In this document: one piece after another, positions 14,256-29,643 of the stretch
Layout of the letters: each line of letters opens with the position of its first letter
Position numbering within the stretch: the first letter of the stretch is position 1
Assembly: GCA_033442325.1 (NCBI GenBank)
Contig: JAWQFM010000004.1
Span: forward strand, 183,510-247,509
DNA length: 64,000 bases
Direction: 5' to 3'
Source: Salpingoeca rosetta
Lineage: Eukaryota; Protista; Choanoflagellata
Notes under the pieces: model-generated
Database searches by the model: none
What the model saw: the letters and a program-made list of their open reading frames with translations, nothing else
What the model was told of the DNA's origin: nothing
Program-made: the position numbers and the translations under genes

Positions 14256-17200
14256 TTAGGCGTCAAAGCCGTAGCCACCCTCCTCGTTGCTGCCGGCCTT
14301 GAGCTTGATCGACGTCGACTTGGGAGGAATGCTGCGCGTACGCACACAACACAACAGGGTGAGGTGAGGTGAGGTGAGGTGAGGTGAGGTGAGGTGAGGT
14401 GAGGTGAGGTGAGGAATTGTTTTTTTTTTTTTTTGGTTGGAGAGAGGGGGTGGGTATGAAGGTGGGCACGAAGCAAGACACAGCACGACACAGCAAACAA
14501 ACACAAACAACAAACAACAACAAACAACCAACAACAAACACAAAACAAATCAAACAAAACAAACACAAAACAACGCAAGCCAACATACCTCGGAGGTGGT
14601 CTGCGGACGGGCGGTGCGCCTGTGGGCGGCTGTGCGTGGCCGTGGTGGACGCGGGTGGTGTCGCTGTCACTCTCGTTGCGCATTGGGAGCTGCGAGTCAA
14701 CCTCCTGCTGCAGCGACAGGCGCGGGGCCTTACCACCAGCTGGCATCGACGAGTACATGCTCTCCGGCTGGGCCTGCACCGGCGCCGACATGTCCAGCCA
14801 GTCCAGCACGACGCGGTACACAAACGCGTACTGGTCGGGCGTCTGGATCATGGCCATGCGCTGCGTGCGCATGTGCTTGGTCACCTGGTACAGGTCCATC
14901 TTGTTCTCCTCCCGCATGCGCTTGAGGCAGATCATGGCGGCAACAAACACGCCCGTGCGGCCAACGCCTGCGCTGCAGTGCACAACAAGCGGCTTCATCT
15001 GCTGCAGGATCGCCTGTAGCGCGTGCGTGCGTGCGTGCGTGCGTTTGTGTATGTGTGTATGTGTGTGGGTTTCGAGGTGAGCATACGACATGCAAACCAT
15101 GCAAGAGCAAAGAAACCACCGCCCACGCAGGCGACAAACAAACGCAAAAAATAAAATAAAAAAATAATCACCACCAATTCGGTCCCCCCTCTCTCCTCTC
15201 CCAAACCACCACCGCGACAACGACCACTACAACGCTGGCTACGCACGTGCTCGTTGATGATTTCGCGGTTGCCGTAGATGCTCTCCTCCTGCGGCATGAC
15301 CACGCGCGAGTTGGCGTACTGCTCAATCTCCTGGATCATGCGCACCAGGTTGGTGCCGGCCGTGGGCGTGCCCTGCGTCGGCCACTCAAGGTACTGCCAC
15401 TGCTTCACCTCGCGCGTCTCGTCCAGCAGCAGGTTCACCAGCATCATCGTGCGCTCCATGAAGAAGCCCCGGTTCACCTCGCTCAGCAGCGTCACCTGGT
15501 AGTCGCCAAAGTTGAGGGGCGGCTCGTCGGGGTCTGGCCAGTACTGCTCAGACTTGACCCGCCCGTTCTCCTCCAGGTGCGTCATCATCACCACAGAGTG
15601 CACACCCTGCTCCCACACCATGCGCCAAAAGTCCGCAAGCGTGTTCTCCAGCGGGCCCTGCGTGGCAATAAACGCGCCCTTCTGCTTGAACCCGTCAATG
15701 AAGCTGGCGTTGATGTAGTCCGAGCCGACAACGCCCGGCACCGTCTGCAGCTTCACTCGCGTGTTGTCAAACGGAAGAATGTTGTTGAAGCGGTTCTTCT
15801 CCTTGTTGGCCAGGATCTGCGCGCTGTCCGTGCGCACGGCGGGGGCCGGGCCCTGTGCCAAGCGGTTGAACTCCTGCTCCAGGTTGGACATGTTCGAGCC
15901 CGCCACGGGCCGCCGCAGCTCGTGGAAGTGCTTGCGCAGCGACTTGGGCGACATCTCCGTCACCGCCGTCGACAGCGCATCGCACAGCGACGAGTAGATG
16001 AAGATGTACTGGTCCTCCGTCTGCACCATCGTGTTGCGCTGGCGACGCATCATGTTCAGGCACCCAAAGATATCCACCCGGCTCTCCCGCGAGGCCTTGT
16101 CCAGGTTGTAGTCCAGCGCCAGGAAAGTACCCGTACGCCCGACACCGGCAGAGCAGTGCACAACCATGGGCCCGGCGTTGGGCTGCGACCGCAGCACCTT
16201 GGCCTTGCGCAGCATGGTGATGATCCCCGCCGTGCTGTCCGGCACGCCGTGATCGGGCCACGACACGTACTGGAACTGCGTCACCGTGCGCGACTGGCGG
16301 CCCACCTGCACCGTCAGCGTGCGGATAACAAAGTCCGGGAACTCCTCCTGCTTGGTGAACCAGATGCTCATGTTGGTGGTGAGCGGCAGCTGGTCGCCAA
16401 CGGCCTGCGGCCAGTACTGGTGGCACTTGATGCGGCCCTTCTCCTCGAGGCGCGTCACCATCACAATCACCGTCGTGCGGTTCTCCCAGATCATGCGCCA
16501 GAAGTCAATCACCGTGTGCGGCAGTGGACCCTGCGCCGCAATGTAGTACTTGGGCACAGAGTACCCGTCAATGTAGTTGGCGTTGATGTAGTCCGAGTTG
16601 GGGTCGCCGCCAATCACAGACAGCTTCACACGCGTGTAGTCGTACGCAAGAATGTTGGCGTAGCGGTTCTTGCTGCGGTTCGCATCCAGCTGCGACGACG
16701 TGCGCGGGAACTGGTCGCCCTTCTCAACACACTCGTACTCCTCCGAGAAGATGAAGTTGGAGTTGGCGCTCATCTGCTCAATCACCCGCGGCAGGTCCGG
16801 CACAGACACCTCGTGCCGCTGCACGGGTGGCATCTGCGGCGCACCAGCACCGCCCATGCTCGAGTAGATGGACGAGCTGTCGCCAGCCACAACCGGCGCT
16901 GCCATTGTGCCTGGCGGGCGCACGGGCACGGGCGGGCCGCCAAAGCTGGTCGACGCCATCGACGCGCCGGGCGGCTGCTGCACGGGCATGTTGCCGCGGG
17001 CAGCGAGCCCACCCTGCTGCTGCTGGTGGTGCTGGCCGTTCTGCGCATACCCCATGGGCGACATGGGCATGGACGACGCGCTCGTCTGCAGCGACGAAAC
17101 AGCCTGGCCATACCCGTTGGACCCGCCGTTGCCAAAGTACGGGTTGCCCTGGCTCGAGTGCACGTTGGTCGTGCCGTTCGACGGCGCGGAGGACTCAAAC

Positions 17201-19921
17201 AGCGGCGGCTTGGACTTCTGGTTGCGGCGGTACCGCACAAACAGGAACACCAGCACGACAATGATGAGCACAACGATGATCGCACCAACAATGGCGCCAA
17301 TGGGGCTGGCTGCGGGTGACGACGTGGACGCCTGTGGGGACGAGATCAGGCGGCCCTTCTCGTCATACACGGGCTCCTTGATCGGGCCAACCGTGTCAAA
17401 CATCTCGGTTCCGTCGCCAGACTGCGTGAAGGCGCGCAGGCGCACGGTGTACGTGGTGCCAGCGCGCAGCGGGCCGTTAAAGAAGCCGCCGTAGTTGAGC
17501 TCGTCGCCCACCACCAGCGAGCCACTCGTCTGCGTCGCGTCGTCACCGGTGTACTGCCGCTGGAAGGCAATGTACGCGCGCGGCGTCTGCTTGTTCACCC
17601 GCGCGTTCTCGTTCGTCTGCCAGTCGCCAAACGCACACTCGTCCTCGCCACTGGCCGACGTGCAGTTGTACATGGTGTTGAAGTGGCGGCTGTCCTCCGG
17701 CTCCACGATGACCTGCACCTGGCGCACGGGCCCAAAGCGCGTGTTGATGATGGGCCACGTGATGCGCAGCGTGGTCTGCTTGCTCTCGCCGTTGGGCCGG
17801 TCGTCGTGGAACTGCACCGTCGGCAGCTCCGCCGGGCGGAACGACCACGTCTGCACAGACTCCGTCGCGCTAAAAGGGCCCGGCGCAAACTCGGTGTTCT
17901 CGGGCGCCACCTTGATCTCGTACATGCGGTTTGGCTCCAGGTCCATCAGCGTCACAGAGGGGTTCTCCTCGCTGGCGTCGTAGGGCACAATCACGTCCGT
18001 GGCGTCCAGTTCCGGAGACGTGGCGCTCTGCCCGCCGTTCTCGACGTAATCCACCGCCAGCCCCTTATAGCTGACCACGTAGTGGCGCGGCGGGCCGTTG
18101 AAGTCGTGCATGGCAATGCGACCCCACTGCACCGTGATGCTGTGCGCGTCGTTGGAGCGGTCTGTGATCACGGGCGTGGCGGCTGGCGGTGCCGCCTCCG
18201 TGCGCACCGTGTTTGTCGTCAGCAGCGCACTGGCGTCAAACCCACCAGCCTGCTCCATGCCAACAAACACAGAGTTGATGGGGTACACGTCCACCTTGTA
18301 CTGCACGTACTCCTGCAGCCCGGAGAAGCTGACACTTGTGGTGGACGTCTCCTGCGTCGCCACCACGTGCTCCGCGGGCGTGTCCGAGTGGTCATCAGCA
18401 AGTTGCGTCAGAATCACGCGGTACTGCAGGCTGGCGTCGTTCCAGTCAGACACGGCGAGCGCGTTCCACGACACGTCCAGCGTGGTCGTGCCCTTGGTGG
18501 TGGTCAGCTGGCCCACACTGGCGCCGGGCAGCGCCGGCGACAGAATGCCGTTGTTGTCTGGCGTGGACACGGTCGTTGTGTCAGTGCCCTCGCCAATGGC
18601 TGTCAGTGGCGTTACCGAGAACGTGTACTTGTCATATGCGCCCAACGACGTGAAGCGCGTACTGAGGCCGTCACCCTGGTTGTTGCTGCCCAGTTCCGCC
18701 AGCGAATATGTGAGGTCGCTGTGCACCTGCGCCTGCGCCTGCTGGTTCGGCGTCACCCGCACGACAACGCGGTACTCTGTGATGATACCGTTGCGCGTTG
18801 CAAGGGTGGGTGGGTTCCACGTCAGCAGCACGCGCTTGGAGGCGTCTGTTTCGTCCGTCTCCTCCGCAGCCACCAGATTGAGCACAGGGCCGGTTGGAAT
18901 GTACTCATCGGTTGTCTTGGAGAAGGAGGGCGACGTGGGCGATTCGGGCGACACGGGCGCGCGGTTGGTGACCGTCGCCGTGAAACTGTACAGCACACCG
19001 GCCCGCAGACCATCAATGACGCGCGAGACAGTCGTGGTGGCGCGCTCCGCCGAAGTGAGCGGCGTCTGCAGCGTGGCCAGGTCGCCAAACGCGTCGTTGC
19101 CGTACTCAATTGTCAGGTTCTGCAGCACGCCGTTGCGGCGGTTGAGTGGACGGATGTTCACGCTCACGCGCACGCGCTTCTCCTGTGCAGTGTCATCTGC
19201 CAGCACCTGCACATTGGTAATGGCTGGTGCCGTGGGCGTTTCCTCCTCCGTCAGCACAGTGATGGTGTTGGCCTCACCGTCGCCCACGCTCGTGTGCGGC
19301 ACAACCTCCAGCGTGTACTCCATGAATGGCTGCAGGCCGGTGGCCTGGAACGTGATGGTGCTGTTGGGCTGGTTCTCAAACTCCGTCACAATGGGCAGGC
19401 TTGCAGCGAGCGTCGAGTCGATCCTCTGCGTGTAGAACGGGTCTGTGGAGATGGTGAGCGTGGCCGTGTAGGCAACAATGCCGTTGCGGTCGGGAACCGG
19501 GAGCGGGTCAAAGTCAATGTCGACTGTACGCGGCGTGACGCTCACGTCGCCAAAGACAACAGGGGCGGACGGAATGGCCTCGTCGGTGCGGATGACGAAC
19601 GTGGCTGCGGGCCCAATGCCAGCAGACGTCCACGCGCGGACCTCAACCGTGTATGTGACGTACGCCTCCAGGCCAACCAGCGGCCACGTGTACACCACGT
19701 CGCCGTTTGCGGGCACAAACGAGTTGCACACGGACGCAGGGCAGTTGTCCAGCGAGTCTGTGGCAACGCGTGGGTCGTCGTCCTGGCGCGAGTACACAAT
19801 GGTGAAGTTGGTGATGAGCCCCTTCCGCTCCAGCGGTTCCGGCAGCTGCCACTCCACCATCAGCGATGACGACGTCGTCGTCACGTCCGTGTTGGTCACG
19901 TTGCCCGTGGGTGCTGCGTGT

Positions 19922-19965
<44 letters not shown>

Positions 19966-20131
19966 CGAGAGTGAGTGAATGAGGGTACAGCTTGGATATG
20001 CGTGTGCTTGTGCATGTGACAGGGAGGTTCACCAGCAGTCACAAACGACTCAAATAACGGCAACCTCAACGAAAGCAGGAGGCAAGGGGCAGGCGCGTGC
20101 AAGTCACCAAAGTTCAACTTACACATACACA

Positions 20132-20176
<45 letters not shown>

Positions 20177-23100
20177 CTGATTCGAGGAGGCGAACTGTGT
20201 AGGTCTCGGACCATGGGCTGAGCAAAGATGACATGCTGCCTTCCGTCTGCATCTGGAACTCGTACACAATGGCGGGATGCAGCGGGTCCCCACTCTCGAG
20301 GGTGGTGAAATCCTTGGTGAATGTCTGCGCACTGTACCTGAACACGTGCCAGTCGTCAGCGCCACCAAAGTCAGCGTCCGTGATGGTTGTGTTATCGGCA
20401 TACGTGGTGTTGGCGGCACGACGCACACGCACGAGGTAGGCGACGAGGTCTGAGTTGTGCGTCTCGGGAGGGGGCGCCTCCCAGGTGATCGTGAATGACG
20501 TGTCTGAAGGGACAATGGACACCACCGCCGGTGGCAGGTCAGGTGGTGCATCATCCGTCTCAAACACAATTGCAGGGAGGTAAAACTCTGTGGCAGAGAT
20601 GGCAAAGCCAGTGTCCACGTTGGTGCGCGCCTGGATGGTCACGTTGTACTTCACGCTCTCCTCGAGGCCGGTAAACACGATTGATGATGCGGGGTGGTCG
20701 ACCGTGCGCACAAATTGGCTGGGCGCGTTCGGGTCGGCGTTTGGCTCATCATCCAGCCGCTGCACGAGCACGAGATACTGCACAACGCCGTTGAGGTCAG
20801 TCTCATCAAGGGGCGTCCACGTGACATTCACCGCAGTGGCGTTGATCACGGCGATGGCGTCAAGTTGCGGTGGCATGTTGGGCGTGTCCTAAACGTGTTG
20901 GCCACAACATCGCGTGAGTACAGGGCAAAGTCAAACGAAGGGCACACGCCAGGTGCAAAGCAAAGGAGGAGGAGGGGGGAGGAGTTCAGATAAATGGAGA
21001 ATTGAGCGATTCATCACAAGGGTGTAAGCAACAGCAGGACGAGTGGCCACAACACAAGCGATGCGTCTATTGCAAACAAACACAAACACACACACACACA
21101 CACACACACCAGTACACAACAGTGCAAAGACACACACACACACACATAACCACACATCAGTACACACGACACACACACACACACCTGATGCGTTTGCGCG
21201 GTTGCGGGTGTGGAGATGACACTGCGACGGTTGCCAAACTCGGCCTGCACCTGCACCTCGTATGTGTGATACGGCAGGATCTGGTCCGTGAGGTCAAGGT
21301 GCAGCGTGTTGCCATCCACGCTCTTCTCAATCACGGGCGCGCCCGTGACGTTGAGGTCGCGGTACTGCACAAAGTAGCGCGTGATGGCGTTGGGCGGCGT
21401 GGGTGGCGCCGTCCAGTCCAGCAGCAAGAGGTAGCCGTCAACGACGTTCATGGCATCCGGGTCAGGGCGGGTGAAGTCGGTGATGACGGGCCGGCGCTGC
21501 GCAAGACAGGTGGGCGTGTCCATCGTGTTGGTGAACGCACGAATTGGCGCATAGCCAAACGGCAGGAAGAGGGAGACGTTGGTGCCGTCGACGTCGAAGG
21601 AGGCATCAAGCGTGTTGTTGACAATCATGTCCTGGCGCGTGTGGAAGTTGTACGCGCCGCTGCCATCAACCTGCAGCACGCTCACGCCAAGCTGGTCGCT
21701 GGAGGCAAGCGGTGTTGACGCCTGGAGGAAGTATGCGCCCGTGTCCTCCGTCCTGTTGGTGCGGGCATACGGGATGCGCACAAACTTGAAGTTCGGACCA
21801 GGGGCAGTGGAGGCCGCAGCAAAGGTGGCATCAAAGTCACTGCTGGAGGCGACTCCAGCCACGTCGAGATACAGGCGCGTGTCGTCGGCTTCGGGGGTGG
21901 ACAGGGTGATGTTGGTCAGCAGCACGCTCACGTTGAAGGACAGCATGCAATCGGAGTCTGCGGCCTGCACGGTTGTGACGGCCACACGCCGCAGCGCAAC
22001 CAGGCGACCCGCCGCCAAAGACAGCAGGAAGGACACGTCGTCAAAGGAAACGATGCCGTCGCTGTTGGTGTCCGCGTCTGCGCCCTCTGCAAGGTCGTTC
22101 TCGGTCAGCCGGCCGCTGTACACATCGGACAGCATCAGCACATCCAGTACGTCCAACACGCCATCGCCGTTCATGTCAAAGGTCGGGTGGTTGGCGAGCA
22201 CCGTCGTGAGGGTGCCGCGGGGGCCGCTGCGACGACGGCGGGCAAGCGTGTTAGCAACCATGGCTGCAGCGTCAAGCTCAAGGTCGGCAGCACCGTCGCT
22301 TGTCAGGCTGCTGCGTCGGCGACGTGTCATCATCATCGGGGTGGTCTCCACAAACAGCGAGGACGTGGTGGCATCAAGCTCAACCAGGCTCGGGTTGCCG
22401 TTGGCGTCCACCTCAACCACGGAGCCGCCGAGCGAGAGCTGCGGGCTGGTGGTGGTGAGGTTGCGGGTGGTAAACACGGCCACGCCGAGCTCAAGGTCGT
22501 CGCTGGTGATGGCATTGCCGGGGATGACGACAAACACGCTCAGTTCACCAGGCGTACGCACGTTGAAGTCGAGGAACGCAAACTGCACGTCCGAGCCAAG
22601 CTCCACCGTGGCCAGCGCAAGGAGGGCCGGGTCGTACGTCAGGCTGAGCACGGCTGCACGCAGGTTCTCCGCCTCAACGTGAAGAGGAACACGCACGCGC
22701 GAGAAGGACGCGGCAGAGACGCCGTGCGGCCCAAAGCTGCCAGCACCCTCTGCGGGCAGGAGGGACGGAAGGCAGGTGACAGTGGCCTGCACGGTGCCGT
22801 TCACGGCGATGCCGATGGTCACCTCTGTCGCGCTGCCATCGTGCAGGGTGATGATGCCGTGTGCGTCCACGCTCAGGGCATCCGTGTTGCTGGACGTGAA
22901 GGTGACGAGGGATCGGATGGCGAGAGAGCCGTCATCAAGACGCACCTGCCCTGGCGACAGTGGCTCGCCGGTCACCTCGGCAGCAATGTCGAGCGTAAAC
23001 GTGGCATTCACCCGGCCAAGGAGAGGGAACGTGCCGTTTGCATTGGCCACAACATCAGCCACGCTGGCGCCCGTCACGCTCAGAGGGAGCGATGCATCGT

Positions 23101-26100
23101 CTCCCGCAGCAAACAGGACGGCGGTGGTGGCCGTGAGACCGCCAAAGGTTGCGGAGAGCGTGGCGTTGCCGGCAATGCTTGTGGTGATCTGCAGGCTGGC
23201 GTCAGCTGGCTGCAGGGCTAGCGCAGCGTCCTCCTGATCTTGCTGGTCGTCGTTGGCAGCGGTGAAGCTGGAGGCAAACACGGCCTGCGCCATTGTGGCA
23301 ACCTGTCGCAGCTGTACCGTCACTGCCATGTCCTGTTTGGTCGTGTTGAACACGGCAACGCAGCTGGCAGTGAGCGCTGGCCAGGCTGTGGCACCGGCGC
23401 CAATTGGCGGGACCTCAAACTGCTCTGCAGCGGCAGCGCCAGACGTGTGTGTGGCCGAGCCCTCAACACCACGGGCCGTCACCGTCATGCGCACAGCATC
23501 GAGCGCGTACTTGTTCACGGTGACAGAGGCCATGAGGTCGCCGTCAACCGTGGTGTACGTGCACTCGCTGGCAACGGCATCTGTCTCCAGCGCTAGCATA
23601 CCTGTGAAGTCACCACAGTTCTCATCGGCAGACGTGAAACTGGCAGACGTCACGGTCTCAACACTGCCGTCGCTGAGGGTGCGGGTGACGGTGAAGGCGG
23701 CCGATGACGGCAGCCCTGTCACAGCCTCGGCTGCGCCTGCGTTGGCAAAGGGCACGACCAAGTCAACGCTTGTCGGCGACACGGCGATGGACACGACAGT
23801 GGCATCTGTCGTGGTCACATTCACGGCGGCCTCAAACGTCTTCCTTGCACATGTGGCCTTCGGCCACTGGGCGGTGATGGCAGCAAGGCCCGAGGTTGCC
23901 GTGGTGGTGACGGTTGCCGGGTCATCGTTGCTCTGCGCCACAGTTGCCACGTCCGTGTTGTCGCTGGCAAAGGCGACTGCGGATGGCGCGAGCGCCAGCT
24001 GCTGCCTGTTCTCCGTGACCTGCTCCATGACGACGGCTGCCACGTAAAGGCGCGCCGCGTTGGCGCTGCTGGTGAAGCGGGGAAGGTTGCTGCTCGACAC
24101 GCTGACCGCGGCCGAGACCCACAGGTTGCCTGCGTCGTTGATGGTGGCGGTAAAAGTGGCGCCACCGACGGCGTACGCACGCACGCCGAGNNNNNNNNNN
24201 NNNNNNNNNNNNNNNNNNNNNNNNNNNNNNNNNNNNNNNNNNNNNNNNNNNNNNNNNNNNNNNNNNNNNNNNNNNNNNNNNNNNNNNNNNNNNNNNNNNN
24301 NNNNNNNNNNNNNNNNNNNNNNNNNNNNNNNNNNNNNNNNNNNNNNNNNNNNNNNNNNNNNNNNNNNNNNNNNNNNNNNNNNNNNNNNNNNNNNNNNNNN
24401 NNNNNNNNNNNNNNNNNNNNNNNNNNNNNNNNNNNNNNNNNNNNNNNNNNNNNNNNNNNNNNNNNNNNNNNNNNNNNNNNNNNNNNNNNNNNNNNNNNNN
24501 NNNNNNNNNNNNNNNNNNNNNNNNNNNNNNNNNNNNNNNNNNNNNNNNNNNNNNNNNNNNNNNNNNNNNNNNNNNNNNNNNNNNNNNNNNNNNNNNNNNN
24601 NNNNNNNNNNNNNNNNNNNNNNNNNCAGCTTCACATCGCGCGTGCGCGTGTCAACAATGGGCCTGCGGTTGCGCACCTGGAGGAACGAGTCAATGTTGCC
24701 GCGCAGCACAAGCATGCTGTCCTCTGCAGCAGGCACAGCGTGCACGGTGGCGGTGAACAGGCTGAAGGACCGCTGCTCAGAAAACTTTGGCTCGTCGGTG
24801 AGGTCGCGAGCAATGCCGGCAACAACGAGCATTTGCTCGCCCGACTCTTCGTCCGTGGTGACGGTGCTGCTGATACTCCAGGCGGCTGTGTTGGCCTCGC
24901 TCATCTCAATGCGGCAGTTGCCGCAGCGGAGCGAGACGCCAAACGAGTGCACGGCCCAGTCGTGGCGGGCAATCACCGCCACGTCCACGGTGTCGTTCTC
25001 GAACACGCTGTTGGTGGGGGTCACGACGGCGGCAATGCTGCTGCTCACACCCAGCACCTCCTGCTGCGTTGGGCCGAGCGTCAGCTGTCCGCACGCCATG
25101 TCGGGGCTGGTCTCGTAGCCCTCGCCGTCTGCGCGTGGCGTCGTGTACTTGAACGTGACATCCACGAGGCGTGGGCCTGCGGACGAGAACCACGCGTCTG
25201 CAAACGTGGTCCACGCGTTGCACACTGCAGGCCCGTCTGTGGGCATGGTGCAGGTGGCCGTCACCTCGGCGTCCTCGTCGTCTGCGGCGACAAACCGCAC
25301 GGTGACGTTTGTGCGCGCAACACGCGAATGCCCGCTGGCGTCCAGCGCGGCAAGCACCACTTGTGCAGTCGGATATGTCGCATACACGTTGTCGAGGACG
25401 GGCGCGCAGTCAACCTGCGCTGCCGGGGCGAGGGGGCGGGTCACCATCTGCGCACCATCCTCGGGCTCGCCGCTGACAGCGACCCATGTGCTCTCCCCTG
25501 GGGCGATGTTGGTGAACACAAACGAGCGGTTCACGCGCATGGACGCATCCATGGCCTGGTCTTGCTGTTGCGACGCGGCGGTTGGGAGAATGTGGTTGGT
25601 GTTCACGCCAATCACGTTCACAGGGGGCGCTGTCTCAAACTCGGTTGGAAGCGCGTTGCACTGCGCGTCGCTCGTGCCCTCGCACACGTTCGTCAAATAC
25701 TGGTCGAGCGAGCACTCCGTGCACTGCAGACACAGGCCGCCGCAGAAGCCGAGCTCCTGGTACAGCCCCGGGTGGGTCGTGGACCGACAGGGCTCGCAGG
25801 GAATGAACATGACGGGCTCGCCGTTTGGGGTGGGGCCAGCGGTGCGCTGCAATGAGGTGGTGTTGGCGGCATCAATGGCGGCAGCCATGGCGTTCAGGGC
25901 ATCTGTGGTGATGGTCAAGGCTGCATCGACGTCCACACGGAACAGCGCCGTGGTGGAGTATGTTGTCGTGGTTGCGTTTGTCGTTGTGTTGGTGGTTGTG
26001 GTGGACACTGTGCTGCGCTCCATAAATGTGGCGGTTGCGTCCGCATCCTCCGTCGCGTTCAACAAGAAGGCATCAAGCACGTCCAGAAGGTCGAGTTTCT

Positions 26101-28378
26101 AAAACAGGTGGCGTTGGGGAGAGGGAACAGGGGTGCAGGGACGAAGGTGTGACGGGGATGGCGAGATCGGTATGATGTTGGGAGGGGGAGGGGTTGGCTG
26201 ATGGATGTGTGGTTCCAGCAGAGAAAAGGAAAGGGGCGGTGGTGCGAAACGAAACATGCACGAGATGGCATGTGTACGTGCAGACACACATACACACGCA
26301 TGCACAACCGTAAACGCCTACACACAACGCACACGCATGCACCACCACAAACCCCTCCACACAACGTCACAGGCACACATGCGTACGCGCGCGCACCCAC
26401 ACACACACGCACACACACACGCGCACACACGCACACACGTGCGCACAGGCGTCATTCTGACCTGGATGTCGAATTGTGTTGATGATGCTGCAAACTGGAG
26501 ATCAAGGTAGACAAATTGCCGGCCCTCCGAGGGCACGTCGAAGCGTGACACCTGCGGCAGGTACGTCACCTCCGTGTTGTTGTACGCTGCATCGTCCAAC
26601 TTGCGCAGCTCGCGTGCGAGCGGGCCGTTGCTGCCGTCCTGGATGGCGGCCTCAATGGCGGCGCGCGTGGCGTCAATCTCCGTCTCCAGCGTGTCCACCT
26701 GCACCACGACGGTGACCGCGGCCTTGCGGAAGTCCAGACAAACGCGGTCCGAGGTTGGCGTGGGCGCATATCGCTCGCGCGAGTACCGGGGATCGCACGT
26801 GGTGATGGGGTCGCACGCGCGGTCAGCGGACGCCGCGCAGGGGCTGGACTCAAACTCCTCGCCAGCGGTGCACGTCCGGCACGCTGTGCACGATTCCAAG
26901 GTGTGGTCGTCGGTGTCCTGGAAGGTACCATCCTCGCACGTCGTGCAGACGGTGTTGGCCGTCAGCGTGCAGTTTGTGGTGAGCTTCTGGCCGAGGCCAC
27001 ACTTGGAGCACATCATGCACGTTGGGTCGAGGTGACCCGTCGCGTTCTGCCACGTGCCGCTGTCACACGCAACACAGGACGTGTTGCTGGTGGCGGTGCA
27101 CGGCGACAACAGGCGCTGGCCAGGGTCGCACCTGCCGCACTGCTTGCACTGCTCCTCCAGGTGGCTGCTGCTGTCCTGGTAGGTGCCGTTCTGGCACGCC
27201 GAGCACATGGCATCACTCGTGCGGTTGCAGGCCATTGCGAGAAACGTGCCCTGCCCACACATTGAGCAGGCCTGGCACTCCATCTCATAGTGGCTTGTCA
27301 TGTTCTGGAAGGTGGCGCCGGTGCACGCGCTGCAGTTGGTGTTTGTCGTGGCAGTGCAGGCGTCGGCAACAAACTGGCCCTGACCGCACATGCTGCAGTC
27401 CTTGCACGTGGAGCTGTTGTGCATCAGCAGGTCCTGGTAGGTGAAGCCTGTGCAGTTGTTGCACAAAATGTTCGATGTCGGGGTGCACTGCAGAAAGGCA
27501 AACTCGCCAGCGGTACACGTGTCGCAAGTGGTGCAGCTGGTCAGATTGTGGCTGTCTGCGGACTGGAACGTGTTGTCCGGGCACGCAGAGCATTGCGTGT
27601 CCATGGTGCGCGTGCAGGCGCTCGCCAGGAACGTGCCGCTCCCGCACGTGTCCGTGCACGGCTTGCACGACATTTCCAGGTGTGCAGTCATGCTCTGGAA
27701 CGTGCCATCTGTACAGTTGCCGCACTGCGTGTCTGTCATGCCACGGCAGTTTGTGGCCACAAACTGACCGGCATCACATGTGCTGCAGTCAGCGCACGTG
27801 GCATTGGTGATGTTTTGCGTTGGGTTGCATGCTTCCACCACATACTGGTTCTCAGCACACGTGCACGGGTCCATCGTCGTCGTCGTCGTCGTCGTGGTGG
27901 TGGTGGTTGCGTTGACAGCTGTCGTTGCGGGCATTGCTGTTGAGTTGGATGGCATGGTCGTGTTTGAGGCCGTGGTTGTCATGTTGGATGGCATGGTTGC
28001 AGGCACCGTTGTTGAGTTTGATGCCATGGTTGCGGGCATGGCTGTTGTGTTGGATGTCATGGTTGTGGTTGATGGTGGTGGTGGTGGTGACGGCATCGTC
28101 GCGTTTCTTCGACGCCGCTCCTGGGAACACGTGCTGCGCGTGATTGGGTCTGTGCGCGCATCAAAGCCAGTGGGCGTGCCAGAGTCACAGACGGTGTCTG
28201 CCTCACGCACCGTGACTTGCACGACGCTCGCGCCCGTCAGGTTGGCTGCAGCCACAAGGGCTTGCTCAAACTGCAGCGAGGTGCGTTGCACGCGATCAAC
28301 AGCAGGCTCGGCAGTGAGCCAACACGGAGGTAGGGCTTGTGTGCGAACCACACCAGGCAAAATGCTACGTCTCTCTCT

Positions 28379-28436
<58 letters not shown>

Positions 28437-28923
28437 TCACTCACACTGACCTCGGTCTGGTTGAAATCGTTGGCCATGAGGTTGTAAATCTCGATGGTGT
28501 GGTTGCGGTTCACGCGACATGCCTCTCCATCGCAAGCACGAGCTGCCGAAACATCACACGTGGTGTGAGATTCCAGCGAACAGGATATGGGCAGGCAGCG
28601 CGCCCAACGCAAGTCTCGTGTGCGTGTGTGTGTGCGCGCGCGTTAAATGCGAATGCGTGCGTGGCGGAGGCAAAACAGGCTGTGCGGCTGTGACGGCAAA
28701 GGATCGAGACACACCCAAAAGCAAGACCACACTGCTCACTCTGTGCGATGGCGAATGGCGTGAAGGATGCAAGAAGGGCGATGACAGCGAGGGCGGACAC
28801 GAGGGCCCAGGGGCGCGGTGTTGCGCTTGGGGCCGGCGCCTCTGTGCGGCTGCCAGCCTTTGTGCTCATGCCGCTGGCTCTGGCGCTTGCTCGGCCTTTT
28901 CGGCTCCCAGCACGCTGCGCCAT
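14256..28923 (-). CDS. Giant receptor-type protein tyrosine phosphatase (~4,300 aa): signal peptide, mucin-like stretch, TNFR-like Cys repeats, TMEM132-like/Ig-like region, cohesin-like domain, dockerin, ~9 FN3, TM helix, tandem PTP D1-D2
   Basis: Eight exons with phase-compatible GT-AG junctions: 28923-28740, 28543-28451, 28270-26462, 26098-21185 (contains an N gap), 20888-20177, 19913-15247, 15013-14589, 14331-14256. Signal WALVSALAVIALLASFTPFAIA; TM IGAIVGAIIVVLIIVVLVFLFV then RYRR. D1 has KNRY, WPDHGVP, HCSAGVGRTG, MVQTEDQY. D2 has KNRF, WPTQGTP, HCSAGVGRTG, MIQTPDQY. C-terminus ...EEGGYGFDA*. Confidence 0.93.
14361..14414. repeat. (GAGGT)n pentanucleotide repeat in the last PTP intron
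   Basis: Directly visible. Confidence 0.95.
22005..22185 (-). other. Dockerin-like domain (duplicated Ca2+-binding F-hand) within the receptor PTP
   Basis: FDMNGDGVLDVLDVLMLSDVYSG ... ADADTNSDGIVSFDDVSFLLSLAAG: two DxNxDGxxxxxD loops, each followed by a hydrophobic helix, with type I dockerin spacing. Confidence 0.85.
22390..22705 (-). other. Cohesin-like domain within the receptor PTP
   Basis: VRVPLHVEAENLRAAVLSLTYDPALLALATVELGSD...FNVRTPGELSVFVV...DLELGVAVF resembles the cohesin consensus V.VPV....F.L.YDP..L.V..V..G......G.I.F.......G.LA.I.F. Confidence 0.7.
24191..24625. other. Assembly gap (N run)
   Basis: Run of N inside the large exon of the receptor PTP. Confidence 1.
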
Positions 28924-29643
28924 GTCTATTGCGTGGCGTTGGCGTGACACGGACAGAGAGGATGCATGTGCGTGTGTGTTTGTTTGTGTGTGGTGGTGTG
29001 AGGGACAGCGAGAGACAGTGCAACAAGAGGACATGACATGAATGGGGGAAGGGCGCTGCAGCGTCATGCATCGGCCTCCACTCAGTTTGACACTCAGGCA
29101 CACGCGCGGACAGCTGCACAAAGCACGTTGCACATCACAGTTGCAGGTTCACGCCCTGATGCGAGACACAGACACATGCAGACAATCCGATCCGCGACAG
29201 TAAAACCATCAGCACCTGTGTTTGGCTTCCTACGGCTGGTCTGGCTGTCTTGCTCACGGGGGATGAGAGGATGTGCAAGGAAGAAGGGGGGGGGGGTGTG
29301 CTGTTGCTGGCTGAACGCACGCACACAGACACACACGGAGAGGGGAGAGAGACACACACCACACAGCAGAGACACACAGTCAAAGCTGGCTGATGATGGA
29401 ATGGGAGGAGAGGGTGTGGTGTGGAGTTGCGATGCTGATGGTGCACGTCAACCACCCACACACCATTCAGGACAAGAAAAATAAAATAAAAAAAATTGTT
29501 TGTGTTGTATTGTTGCGCTGTGTTGTGCTGTGCTTTGCTTTGTTTGGCTTGGGGTGTGTGTGGGCAGTTCACGGTAGAACGAGTCGCTCTAATGTGCATC
29601 CAGCTGGCGCTGATTTCCTAGAAATCATTGCAAACTTTCCGCA

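What the first reader, a model, noticed from the sequence alone, without database searches (positions are those of the whole stretch)
22005..22705. Cohesin - double furin site - dockerin 'clasp' inside a receptor tyrosine phosphatase ectodomain
Seen in sequence: a cohesin-like domain (VRVPLHV..LSLTYDPALL..) is followed by a short linker with two tetrabasic sites, TRRRR|SS (22313-22324) and ARRRR|SG (22229-22240). Directly after these comes a two-loop dockerin (DMNGDGVLDVLD 22177-22142; DTNSDGIVSFDD 22072-22037), then FN3 repeats, TM and PTP domains. Established: cohesin-dockerin pairs are the high-affinity, Ca2+-dependent, mechanically strong couplers of bacterial cellulosomes; R-X-K/R-R is the furin/kexin consensus; several animal RPTPs are furin-cleaved into non-covalently joined subunits; cohesin and dockerin domains have been reported in some choanoflagellate cadherins. 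Inference: cleavage would excise the linker and leave a distal ectodomain of over 2,000 aa ending in a cohesin, re-attached to a membrane-bound PTP subunit that begins with a dockerin. That would be a Ca2+- or force-releasable, possibly exchangeable tether, comparable in role to SEA, GAIN or Notch NRR modules but built from cellulosome parts. The freed dockerin could also capture cohesins of other proteins or neighbouring cells. I do not know of this mechanism being described.
Basis: partly seen in the sequence, partly recalled or inferred. Interest (0 to 1): 0.9.

Follow-up and report, generated by a model that had tools for sequence, protein, structure and literature searches.

The report
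Cohesin-dockerin clasp in receptor phosphatase
A giant receptor tyrosine phosphatase of a choanoflagellate carries a bacterial-type cohesin and dockerin joined by a floppy linker with two conserved convertase cutting sites, so the protein is probably cut in two and held together by this plug-and-socket pair.

Summary
The first domain folds as a cohesin and the second as a two-loop dockerin. The 45-residue stretch between them is predicted disordered and holds RRRR (22313-22324) and RRRR (22229-22240).

The decisive result is comparative. The same cassette (cohesin, RRRR, a 23-45 aa spacer, RxRR, dockerin) recurs about 22 times in this 55-Mb genome, in cadherins, EGF- and TNFR-repeat proteins. 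It also occurs in the ortholog from another organism.
- At 18-25% identity between copies, the P4, P2 and P1 arginines of site 2 are invariant, while P3 varies. That is the furin pattern.
- Site 1 is kept in 12 of 13 aligned copies.
- The four calcium-loop aspartates are invariant.

The genome encodes a furin-like convertase. A complex model pairs this cohesin with its own dockerin (0.71 against 0.02 for the best control). RNA reads and an 11.7-kb spliced transcript contig put the cassette and the phosphatase in one mRNA.

Cleavage and holding are inferred, not shown. Release by calcium is unlikely in sea water.

The scan found the same clasp before on other DNA of this genome (s1-435889, s1-435919). 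I found no published description.

The parts
22358..22705 (-). Cohesin domain (beta-sandwich), the last domain of the distal ectodomain
   Evidence: AF2 strands at residues 21-134 of window:21980-22759(-), pLDDT about 90. Top 45 Foldseek PDB hits are all cohesins. The family profile hits cohesins at E 3.4e-8. Pfam Cohesin E 0.006, below the cut-off.
22313..22324 (-). Site 1: RRRR followed by S, directly after the last cohesin strand; putative convertase site
   Evidence: Present in 12 of 13 aligned cassettes and in the ortholog. pLDDT below 50.
22241..22312 (-). Spacer of 24 residues between the sites; putative excised connecting peptide
   Evidence: In other copies the span from the site-1 cut to the site-2 cut (spacer plus site 2) is 23-45 aa, and 0 in one copy where the sites are fused. 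The sequence is not conserved and is low-complexity. Predicted disordered.
22229..22240 (-). Site 2: RRRR followed by SG; putative convertase site before the dockerin
   Evidence: R at P4, P2 and P1 is invariant in all 13 aligned cassettes, and P3 varies (A, V, L, K, H, M, T, R).
21998..22228 (-). Dockerin: two 12-residue Ca2+ loops (22177-22142 and 22072-22037), each followed by a helix
   Evidence: AF2 pLDDT 81-90. Top 37 Foldseek hits are all dockerins. The profile's best PDB hit is a type I dockerin at 2.2e-7. Four loop Asp are invariant. It is the most conserved segment against the ortholog, at 59%.
21497..21997 (-). Conserved post-dockerin domain of about 165 aa, no Pfam family
   Evidence: Follows the dockerin in all cassettes. 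40% identical to the ortholog. No Pfam hit.
21184..21496 (-). First FN3 repeat and the end of the long exon
   Evidence: Pfam fn3 E 6e-7. The exon end at 21184 is set by the spliced reads.
20888..21183 (-). Intron, GT..AG on the minus strand
   Evidence: Joint 20887/21184 seen in 4 + 27 stranded RNA reads and in transcript contigs of two other runs.
17302..20887 (-). FN3-repeat stalk, two exons, with a second intron at about 19914-20183
   Evidence: Pfam fn3 E 1e-34. The transcript contig X1 spans it.
17236..17301 (-). Transmembrane helix
   Evidence: A 22-residue hydrophobic run followed by RYRRNQK.
15985..16680 (-). PTP domain D1 with HCSAGVGR (16158-16135)
   Evidence: Pfam Y_phosphatase E 1e-134, two stretches.
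14256..15795 (-). PTP domain D2, continued in the next exon with a second HCSAGVGRTG
26318..28612 (-). Upstream exon with seven TNFR cysteine-rich repeats, part of the distal ectodomain
   Evidence: Pfam TNFR_c6 E 6e-55, 7 stretches. A signal-peptide-like start lies in the ORF 28510-29133.
22706..26080 (-). Rest of the long exon upstream of the cohesin (Ig-like region; assembly gap 24191-24625)
   Evidence: One open frame. No Pfam family at 22721-24190. Paralogs carry a Pfam TMEM132 sixth domain at the matching place.

Best explanation
This is a cleave-and-hold joint inside a type I receptor tyrosine phosphatase. The proposed sequence of events is as follows. (1) In the Ca2+-rich secretory pathway the cohesin and the dockerin fold, and the roughly 45-residue disordered tether lets the dockerin dock onto its own cohesin in cis. 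(2) A furin/kexin-type convertase then cuts after RRRR (site 1) and after RRRR (site 2) and removes the spacer, much as the C-peptide is removed from proinsulin. (3) The mature receptor is a non-covalent heterodimer. One subunit is a distal part of about 2,000 aa (TNFR repeats, Ig-like domains) that ends in the cohesin. The other is a membrane part that begins with the dockerin and continues through a conserved beta-domain, the FN3 stalk, the TM helix and two PTP domains. (4) The joint can then part under load or after further proteolysis, uncoupling the ligand-binding part from the phosphatase. Shown here: the domain identities, the disorder of the linker, the conservation of the sites, the presence of a convertase gene, the single mRNA and the predicted pairing. 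Inferred: the cleavage itself, that the halves stay together, and any signalling consequence.
For: Folds: cohesin; dockerin. A protein language-model search also lands on cohesin/dockerin clusters, score 0.95. Linker pLDDT is below 50 over residues 140-184. Sites: the cassette is found 24 times, about 22 cassettes, by the profile in this genome. Among 9 invariant columns of 383, three are the site-2 arginines and four are Ca-loop Asp; RRRR of site 1 is kept in 12 of 13. P3 is variable and P1' is small or polar. The extra copies show the same pattern. The ortholog P0001 keeps both sites around a spacer that differs in length and sequence. R-x-K/R-R occurs 41 times in the 181-aa linker zones against 24 times in 21,762 flanking residues, and those 24 sit mostly in three loci; all 3 sites in the 3,320 aa of L025 lie in its cassette. 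Convertase: four P-domain loci, and L022 has S8 plus P domain with furin as best PDB hit at E 3.5e-40. Pairing: ipSAE 0.71 in three runs against 0.02 for the best of 3 controls. That mark was reached by 51 of 78 solved complexes and 2 of 108 mismatched pairs. The runs agree in at least 96% of contacts, the partner's pLDDT is at least 76, and the contacts run through dockerin helices 1 and 3 onto one cohesin sheet. The single-chain AF2 model has pTM 0.68 although 27% of it is disordered. One gene: stranded reads, the intron joint, and an 11.7-kb spliced contig reaching from upstream of the cassette past the TM and D1. Topology: signal-peptide-like start and TM helix.
Against: No protein-level data exist: cleavage, subunit association and Ca2+ dependence are untested. 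The complex score may reflect the model's memory of solved cohesin-dockerin complexes, and the tool says a pass shows likeness, not that this copy binds. This copy is below both Pfam cut-offs. The dockerin profile also hits calmodulin EF-hand pairs at about 1e-6. Conservation outside this genome rests on one ortholog of unidentified origin; three wider searches found nothing more. One cassette has a single site and one has none, so excision of a spacer is not obligatory.
Confidence: 0.58

Rival explanations
1. Cleave-and-exchange network. The cuts free the cohesin C-terminus and the dockerin N-terminus so that they pair in trans with dockerins and cohesins of the other roughly 20 cassette proteins, on the same or neighbouring cells. 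This would build a cellulosome-like extracellular scaffold or cell-cell links rather than re-joining the same chain.
For: About 22 cassettes lie in at least 12 large surface proteins, and some proteins have three cassettes in a row. Cellulosomes work by trans pairing (established knowledge). The tool notes that close cousins of a true partner also pass its test.
Against: Cohesin and dockerin are always adjacent in a 1:1 ratio and in the same order, which fits a cis pair. The tether favours cis pairing before cutting. Predicted interface positions are more variable between paralogs than the rest of the domains (entropy 2.28 against 1.91, and 2.14 against 1.69) but similar in the ortholog, which suggests private pairs. 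No cross-pair was modelled.
Confidence: 0.17
2. Cleave-and-shed. The convertase cuts release the distal ectodomain as a soluble or matrix protein. The cohesin and dockerin serve other partners and do not hold the halves together.
For: Convertase-type sites in a disordered linker. Ectodomain shedding is common for animal RPTPs (established knowledge).
Against: A single site would be enough for shedding. It would not explain why a cohesin and a dockerin flank the cut in every one of about 22 cassettes, nor the confident cognate model, nor why the dockerin is the most conserved segment.
Confidence: 0.1
3. An uncut static joint. The cohesin binds the dockerin in cis as a rigid structural elbow, and the arginine runs serve another purpose, such as binding sulfated glycans of the matrix or theca.
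For: Poly-arginine can bind polyanions. No cleavage data exist.
Against: At site 2 the conserved positions are exactly P4, P2 and P1 with a free P3, which is the furin rule and not a charge patch. The motifs sit in disordered segments at fixed places at the domain edges. A furin-like enzyme is encoded.
Confidence: 0.12
4. Chance resemblance: the domains are a generic Ig-like sandwich and an ordinary EF-hand pair, not a cohesin and a dockerin.
For: This copy is below both Pfam cut-offs. Calmodulins score close to dockerins with the sequence profile.
Against: The fold searches return only cohesins (45 of 45) and only dockerins (37 of 37) at the top. No helix precedes loop 1, unlike an EF-hand. 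Paralogs pass both Pfam cut-offs, at 51 and 33.6 bits.
Confidence: 0.03

Closest known systems
Type I cohesin-dockerin pairs of bacterial cellulosomes, and the Clostridium perfringens NagJ/NagH pair
   Same: Same two folds. There are two 12-residue Ca2+ loops with a full ligand set. The predicted contact runs through dockerin helices 1 and 3 onto one sheet of the cohesin.
   Different: Here both modules lie in one eukaryotic polypeptide, adjacent and in a fixed order, with convertase-type sites between them. The setting is a signalling receptor, not an enzyme scaffold. After cutting, load would pass through the cohesin N-terminus and the dockerin C-terminus; in the cellulosome the enzyme-borne dockerin is loaded through its N-terminus (my knowledge).
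Furin-processed animal receptor PTPs (LAR, PTP-sigma, PTP-delta, PTP-mu) and Notch S1 in the NRR
   Same: Type I receptors cut by a convertase at R-x-K/R-R in the ectodomain, with the two subunits staying together non-covalently (established knowledge). This protein has the same FN3 - TM - tandem PTP layout as the LAR type.
   Different: In animals the cut lies within or next to an FN3 or HD domain, whose own fold holds the halves. Here a dedicated plug-and-socket pair flanks the cut, there are two cuts, and the joint lies about 1,350 aa from the membrane.
SEA and GAIN autoproteolytic modules
   Same: A cleave-and-hold logic in giant adhesion receptors, which allows subunit separation under force.
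   Different: SEA and GAIN cut themselves inside one fold. Here an external protease is needed and two independent domains do the holding.
Proinsulin C-peptide
   Same: Two basic convertase sites flank a poorly conserved connecting peptide, which first tethers two parts so that they pair and is then excised.
   Different: Insulin chains are held by disulfides. Here the holding would be non-covalent, by cohesin-dockerin.
Coherin, lefftyrin and hedgling cadherins, and the TMEM132 block (Nichols 2012, cited in PMC6030884; Sanchez-Pulido and Ponting 2017)
   Same: Cohesin domains in choanoflagellate giant surface proteins are known. Cassette-bearing paralogs here carry cadherin repeats and the Pfam TMEM132 sixth domain.
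   Different: PMC6030884 describes a cohesin that precedes three BIG domains. It mentions no adjacent dockerin and no cleavage sites, and it states that dockerins are not detectable in vertebrates. This gene showed no cadherin repeat in the exons scanned.
Bacterial proteins with both a cohesin and a dockerin
   Same: The nearest ESM Atlas clusters are proteins of 184-281 aa that carry both Pfam Cohesin and Dockerin_1; the clusters with recorded taxa are bacterial (Chloroflexota, Bacillota, Minisyncoccota).
   Different: None of the prokaryotic hits I inspected has an R-x-K/R-R site. They were not studied further.

Membership tests
Cohesin (Pfam PF00963) | Sequence match to the family profile above the curated cut-off | tested here: inconclusive
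   This copy scores 17.2 bits against a cut-off of 24.1, E 0.006. Sixteen paralogous copies pass, up to 51.4 bits. The profile of 13 cassettes hits only cohesins in the PDB, at best 3.4e-8.
Cohesin (Pfam PF00963) | Elongated beta-sandwich (jelly-roll) fold | tested here: met
   AF2 pLDDT about 90. The top 45 Foldseek PDB hits are all cohesins, E 3.4e-7 to 1e-3, TM by target up to 0.72. The Atlas fold search gives cohesin clusters.
Cohesin (Pfam PF00963) | Binds a dockerin through one sheet face | tested here: inconclusive
   Modelled only: ipSAE 0.71 against 0.02 for the best control, and possibly from memory of solved complexes. No binding assay.
Dockerin type I (Pfam PF00404) | Sequence match above the curated cut-off | tested here: inconclusive
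   20.9-21.4 bits against a cut-off of 22.9. Paralogs reach 33.6 bits. The best PDB hit of the profile is a type I dockerin at 2.2e-7, but calmodulins follow at about 1e-6.
Dockerin type I (Pfam PF00404) | Duplicated segment: a 12-residue Ca2+ loop followed by a helix, with no entering helix | tested here: met
   Both loops follow D-x-N-x-D-G-x-x-x-x-x-D. Four Asp are invariant in 13 copies. Helices follow each loop, and no long helix abuts loop 1.
Dockerin type I (Pfam PF00404) | Dockerin fold | tested here: met
   The top 37 Foldseek hits are all dockerins, TM by target 0.78-0.80, rmsd 2.0-2.3 A over 57-59 residues. E is only 0.04 because the domain is small.
Dockerin type I (Pfam PF00404) | Ca2+-dependent folding and binding | not testable with these tools
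   Needs ITC or CD with and without EGTA.
Proprotein convertase (furin/kexin) substrate | R-x-K/R-R motif in an exposed, luminal segment | tested here: met
   Two RRRR motifs lie in a segment with pLDDT below 50, between a signal-peptide-like start and the TM helix. P4, P2 and P1 are invariant and P3 is free.
Proprotein convertase (furin/kexin) substrate | A convertase in the same organism | tested here: met
   Four P-domain loci. L022 has Peptidase_S8 plus P_proprotein, with furin as best PDB hit at 3.5e-40.
Proprotein convertase (furin/kexin) substrate | Actual cleavage | not testable with these tools
   Needs westerns or N-terminomics. RNA reads show no splice that removes the linker.
Receptor-type protein tyrosine phosphatase | Single TM helix and cytoplasmic PTP domain(s) with the HCx5R motif | tested here: met
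   Y_phosphatase E 1e-134, two domains. HCSAGVGR in D1 and in D2. TM at 17236-17301.
Lefftyrin / coherin cadherins | Cadherin repeats in the ectodomain | tested here: not met
   No Cadherin hit in any exon scanned, although 145 aa lie in an assembly gap. Cadherin repeats do occur in three of seven paralogous cassette carriers scanned.

The most novel reading that the evidence does not exclude
The cassette is a pre-metazoan mechanical fuse and identity code. Each of the roughly 22 cohesin-dockerin pairs would be a private, Ca2+-loaded joint with a set rupture force. Pulling on the distal ectodomain by prey, substrate or a neighbouring cell would part the joint and switch the membrane stump; here that means phosphatase activity or clustering. 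The exposed dockerin or cohesin could then be re-plugged. This would be a third, independent solution beside GAIN and SEA for force-gated receptors, built from parts of bacterial origin in the closest relatives of animals.
Probability: 0.15. Interest if true: 0.92.

Novelty: new variant of a known kind. Interest (0 to 1): 0.8.

Why it matters
Receptors that are cut and then held together, such as Notch, adhesion GPCRs, mucins and LAR-type phosphatases, are central to how animal cells sense contact and force. This cassette would be another way to build such a joint. It uses the strongest known non-covalent protein pair, which was until now tied to bacterial cellulosomes. [quoted passage not shown]

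It gives a concrete function to the long-puzzling cohesin domains of choanoflagellate cadherins. It shows that their partner dockerin sits next door. It is also directly testable in a genetically tractable organism. The small size and modularity of the cassette could make it useful as an engineered cleavable tether.

Tried and rejected
1. Word-indexed protein searches. I searched with a 3,320-aa cassette carrier (region on the cassette), with the ortholog, and with the 13-row alignment. They gave only bacterial dockerin proteins, the query itself, or nothing. Conservation outside this genome therefore rests on one ortholog.
2. Metagenome scan. The single protein found no relative.
4. Nichols et al. 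2012 and Peer et al. 2009 are not held. What they say about dockerins in choanoflagellates is known to me only through PMC6030884 and from memory.
5. Pfam TMEM132 families did not hit this gene's upstream region, only the paralogs.
6. EF-hand pair reading: rejected on fold ranking and helix layout.
7. Lefftyrin membership: rejected, no cadherin repeats.
8. Ca2+ as a physiological release signal: judged unlikely for a marine cell surface. This is my reasoning, not a test.
9. Cross-pair specificity could not be modelled, because only one complex job is allowed.
Full report
WHAT IS THERE. The window is G000:C4:183510-247509 of a 55.4-Mb assembly in 68 contigs. Its size and gene content fit the choanoflagellate Salpingoeca rosetta.

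The finding lies on the minus strand inside one long open exon frame, 26080 down to 21184, which is interrupted only by an assembly gap at 24191-24625.
- RRRR codons at 22324-22313 and at 22240-22229.
- Dockerin loops at 22177-22142 and at 22072-22037.

Downstream come a conserved domain with no Pfam family, FN3 repeats, a TM helix (17301-17236) and two PTP domains, each with HCSAGVGR. Upstream lie seven TNFR cysteine-rich repeats and a signal-peptide-like start. The distal part that ends at site 1 is about 2,000-2,100 aa. The exact number is uncertain because of the gap.

ONE GENE, EXPRESSED. Stranded RNA reads cover the region in the orientation expected for a minus-strand gene. The intron 20888-21183 (GT..AG on the minus strand) is bridged by 4 and 27 reads in two raw RNA runs and by contigs of two other runs. 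One spliced contig of 11,676 letters runs from about 5 kb upstream of 22800 to about 4 kb beyond 19700, which is past the TM helix and PTP D1. The second intron (about 19914-20183) lies in CA repeats that the tool skipped. The contig holds 7 further letters there, which by my arithmetic keeps the frame. No joint removes the linker.

ARE THEY A COHESIN AND A DOCKERIN? On its own this copy falls just short of both Pfam cut-offs: Cohesin 17.2 bits against 24.1, Dockerin_1 about 21 bits against 22.9. Four lines of evidence nevertheless support the two assignments.
- Paralogs in the same genome pass both cut-offs, up to 51.4 and 33.6 bits.
- A profile of 13 cassette cohesins hits only cellulosomal and NagJ cohesins in the PDB, at best 3.4e-8. 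The dockerin profile's best hit is a type I dockerin at 2.2e-7, with calmodulins close behind.
- In the AF2 model of the whole cassette, pLDDT is about 90 over the cohesin (residues 20-135) and the dockerin (185-254) and below 50 over 140-184. Its top 45 Foldseek PDB hits are all cohesins. The dockerin modelled alone has pLDDT 81. Its top 37 hits are all dockerins, with TM by target 0.78-0.80 and rmsd about 2 A, and no EF-hand protein ranks above them.
- A language-model search lands on clusters annotated with both cohesin and dockerin, score 0.95.
Both Ca2+ loops have the full D-x-N-x-D-G...D ligand set.

THE KEY RESULT: A CASSETTE FAMILY WITH INVARIANT ARGININES. Searching the genome with Pfam Cohesin and then reading downstream showed that every cohesin hit is followed by the same series. 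The series is RRRR right after the last strand, a low-complexity spacer, R-x-R-R, often a short Cys-rich stub, a dockerin, and the same unnamed beta-domain. A profile of 13 cassettes finds 24 matches, about 22 cassettes, in at least 12 very large open frames. Three frames have two or three cassettes in a row, on C7, C6 and C4. The newly found copies show the same pattern, with three exceptions: one copy has a single RTRR, one has the two sites fused into eight arginines, and one is degenerate.

The copies are only 18-25% identical to ours, and the alignment has 9 invariant columns of 383. Three of those are the site-2 arginines at P4, P2 and P1. Four are the Ca-loop aspartates and two are cohesin glycines. 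The four arginines of site 1 are kept in 12 of 13 copies. P3 of site 2 is A, V, L, K, H, M, T or R, and P1' is S, A, D, N, E or R. That is the furin/kexin rule R-x-K/R-R (established knowledge), not a mere basic patch.

The motif is nearly confined to these linkers. There are 41 starts in the 181-aa zones of 20 loci against 24 in 21,762 flanking residues, and most of those 24 lie in three loci. In 3,320 aa of one carrier, all three sites lie in its cassette.

The exhaustive representative search found one ortholog, P0001, from Logan assemblies of two SRA runs of an organism I could not identify. It keeps both sites, while its site-to-site stretch is 41 instead of 28 residues and barely alignable. 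By segment, identity to it is as follows:
- cohesin 32%
- dockerin 59%, the best-kept part of the exon
- post-dockerin domain 40%
- FN3 40%

CAN IT BE CUT, AND WOULD IT HOLD? The genome has four P-domain loci. One open frame combines Peptidase_S8 with the P domain, and its best solved relatives are furin (3.5e-40) and kexin.

The two domains were cut exactly at the proposed sites and given as separate chains with two Ca2+. They were modelled as a pair with ipSAE 0.71 in all three runs, against 0.02 for the best of 3 controls. That mark was reached by 51 of 78 solved complexes and 2 of 108 mismatched pairs. The runs agree in at least 96% of contacts, and the partner's pLDDT is at least 76. The contacts use dockerin residues 27-40 and 62-75, the two helices that follow the loops, against one sheet of the cohesin, as in type I complexes. 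The tool warns that families with solved complexes can pass from memory. I therefore read this as "looks like a working pair", not as proof.

The predicted interface positions vary more among paralogs than the rest of the domains but are similar in the ortholog. This hints at private pairs. The sample is small and this is an inference.

MECHANISM. The best reading is cis docking in the secretory pathway, helped by the tether, followed by convertase cuts at both sites and loss of the spacer. The result is a non-covalent two-subunit receptor. Because one copy has the sites fused and one has a single site, the chain break seems to be what is selected, rather than the peptide. Ca2+ is probably structural rather than regulatory at a marine cell surface (my reasoning). 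Separation by force or by further proteolysis is possible but untested. The rivals are trans exchange, pure shedding and an uncut elbow; they are listed with their tests.

WHAT IS KNOWN. Cohesin domains in choanoflagellate and sponge cadherins (coherins) and in TMEM132 are published. PMC6030884 places a cohesin before three BIG domains, states that dockerins are not detectable in vertebrates, and says nothing about cleavage. Full-text searches gave no description of this arrangement. They combined dockerin with choanoflagellate, furin, proprotein convertase, Monosiga/Salpingoeca/cadherin and sponge/holozoan terms. Nichols 2012 and Peer 2009 could not be read, so prior mention there cannot be excluded.

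Two earlier reports of this scan describe the same clasp on other DNA of this genome: a 7TM protein and a receptor phosphatase, the latter probably the 99% identical copy on C18. My cassette count and reading were reached independently and agree with theirs. Their sponge copy was not tested here.

VERDICT. It is a new variant of the cleave-and-hold receptor design, and it is genome-wide rather than a single oddity.

Noticed in passing
L002 / L041 = G000:C18:326540-330316: A 99% identical second copy of this exon, cassette included, lies on another contig. Minor variants in the RNA reads (for example 21973 T>G in 15 of 45 reads) match that copy. So it is either an expressed recent duplicate or a second haplotype assembled separately. 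C12:51006 and C5:1866062 form a similar near-identical pair.
   Followed up: partly
window 21497-21997 (-), and after every cassette (e.g. L015, L018): A conserved domain of about 165 aa with no Pfam family always follows the dockerin (40% identical in the ortholog). It may brace the dockerin, as an X module does in type II/III pairs. It was not folded here.
   Followed up: no
G000:C7:2027075-2037655; C6:1969803-1980449; C4:1897918-1905807: Single open frames of 6,100-7,600 aa hold two or three cassettes about 1,600-2,300 aa apart. If all sites are cut, these proteins would be chains of three or four pieces linked only by cohesin-dockerin pairs.
   Followed up: partly
L010, L012, L007, L008, L016, L017 and others, just after site 2: Most paralogs have a short Cys-rich stub (C-x-x-P-P-C-x-x-C-like) between site 2 and the dockerin, and a Cys inside loop 1 (G-D-x-N-x-D-C). 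This gene and three others lack both. It could be a disulfide staple of the new N-terminus.
   Followed up: no
L030, L032 (about 370-460 aa upstream of their cohesins): The Pfam 'TMEM132 sixth domain' (PF23487) hits upstream of the cassette in paralogs (E 1.8e-8 and 1.4e-5). So the cassette sits at the C-terminal end of a TMEM132-like Ig array. No such hit was found in this gene's own upstream region.
   Followed up: partly
window 26318-28612 (-): Seven TNFR/NGFR cysteine-rich repeats (E 6e-55) lie in the distal ectodomain of a receptor PTP. This combination is not found in animal RPTP subtypes as far as I know.
   Followed up: no
L026 / L027 (Logan contigs of SRR14727191 and SRR14727189): The only ortholog found comes from an unidentified organism's assembly. 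The contig ends just after the same exon boundary (…HQV), so it looks genomic or unspliced. Identifying the organism would date the cassette.
   Followed up: no
ESM Atlas clusters: Proteins of 184-281 aa that carry both a cohesin and a dockerin form several clusters; those with recorded taxa are bacterial (Chloroflexota, Bacillota, Minisyncoccota). They are a possible source of the eukaryotic cassette by gene transfer.
   Followed up: no
window 19914-20183, 20948-21157: Both introns next to the cassette exon are filled with (CA)n/(GT)n repeats, which read as long Cys-Val runs when the exon frame is translated through.
   Followed up: no
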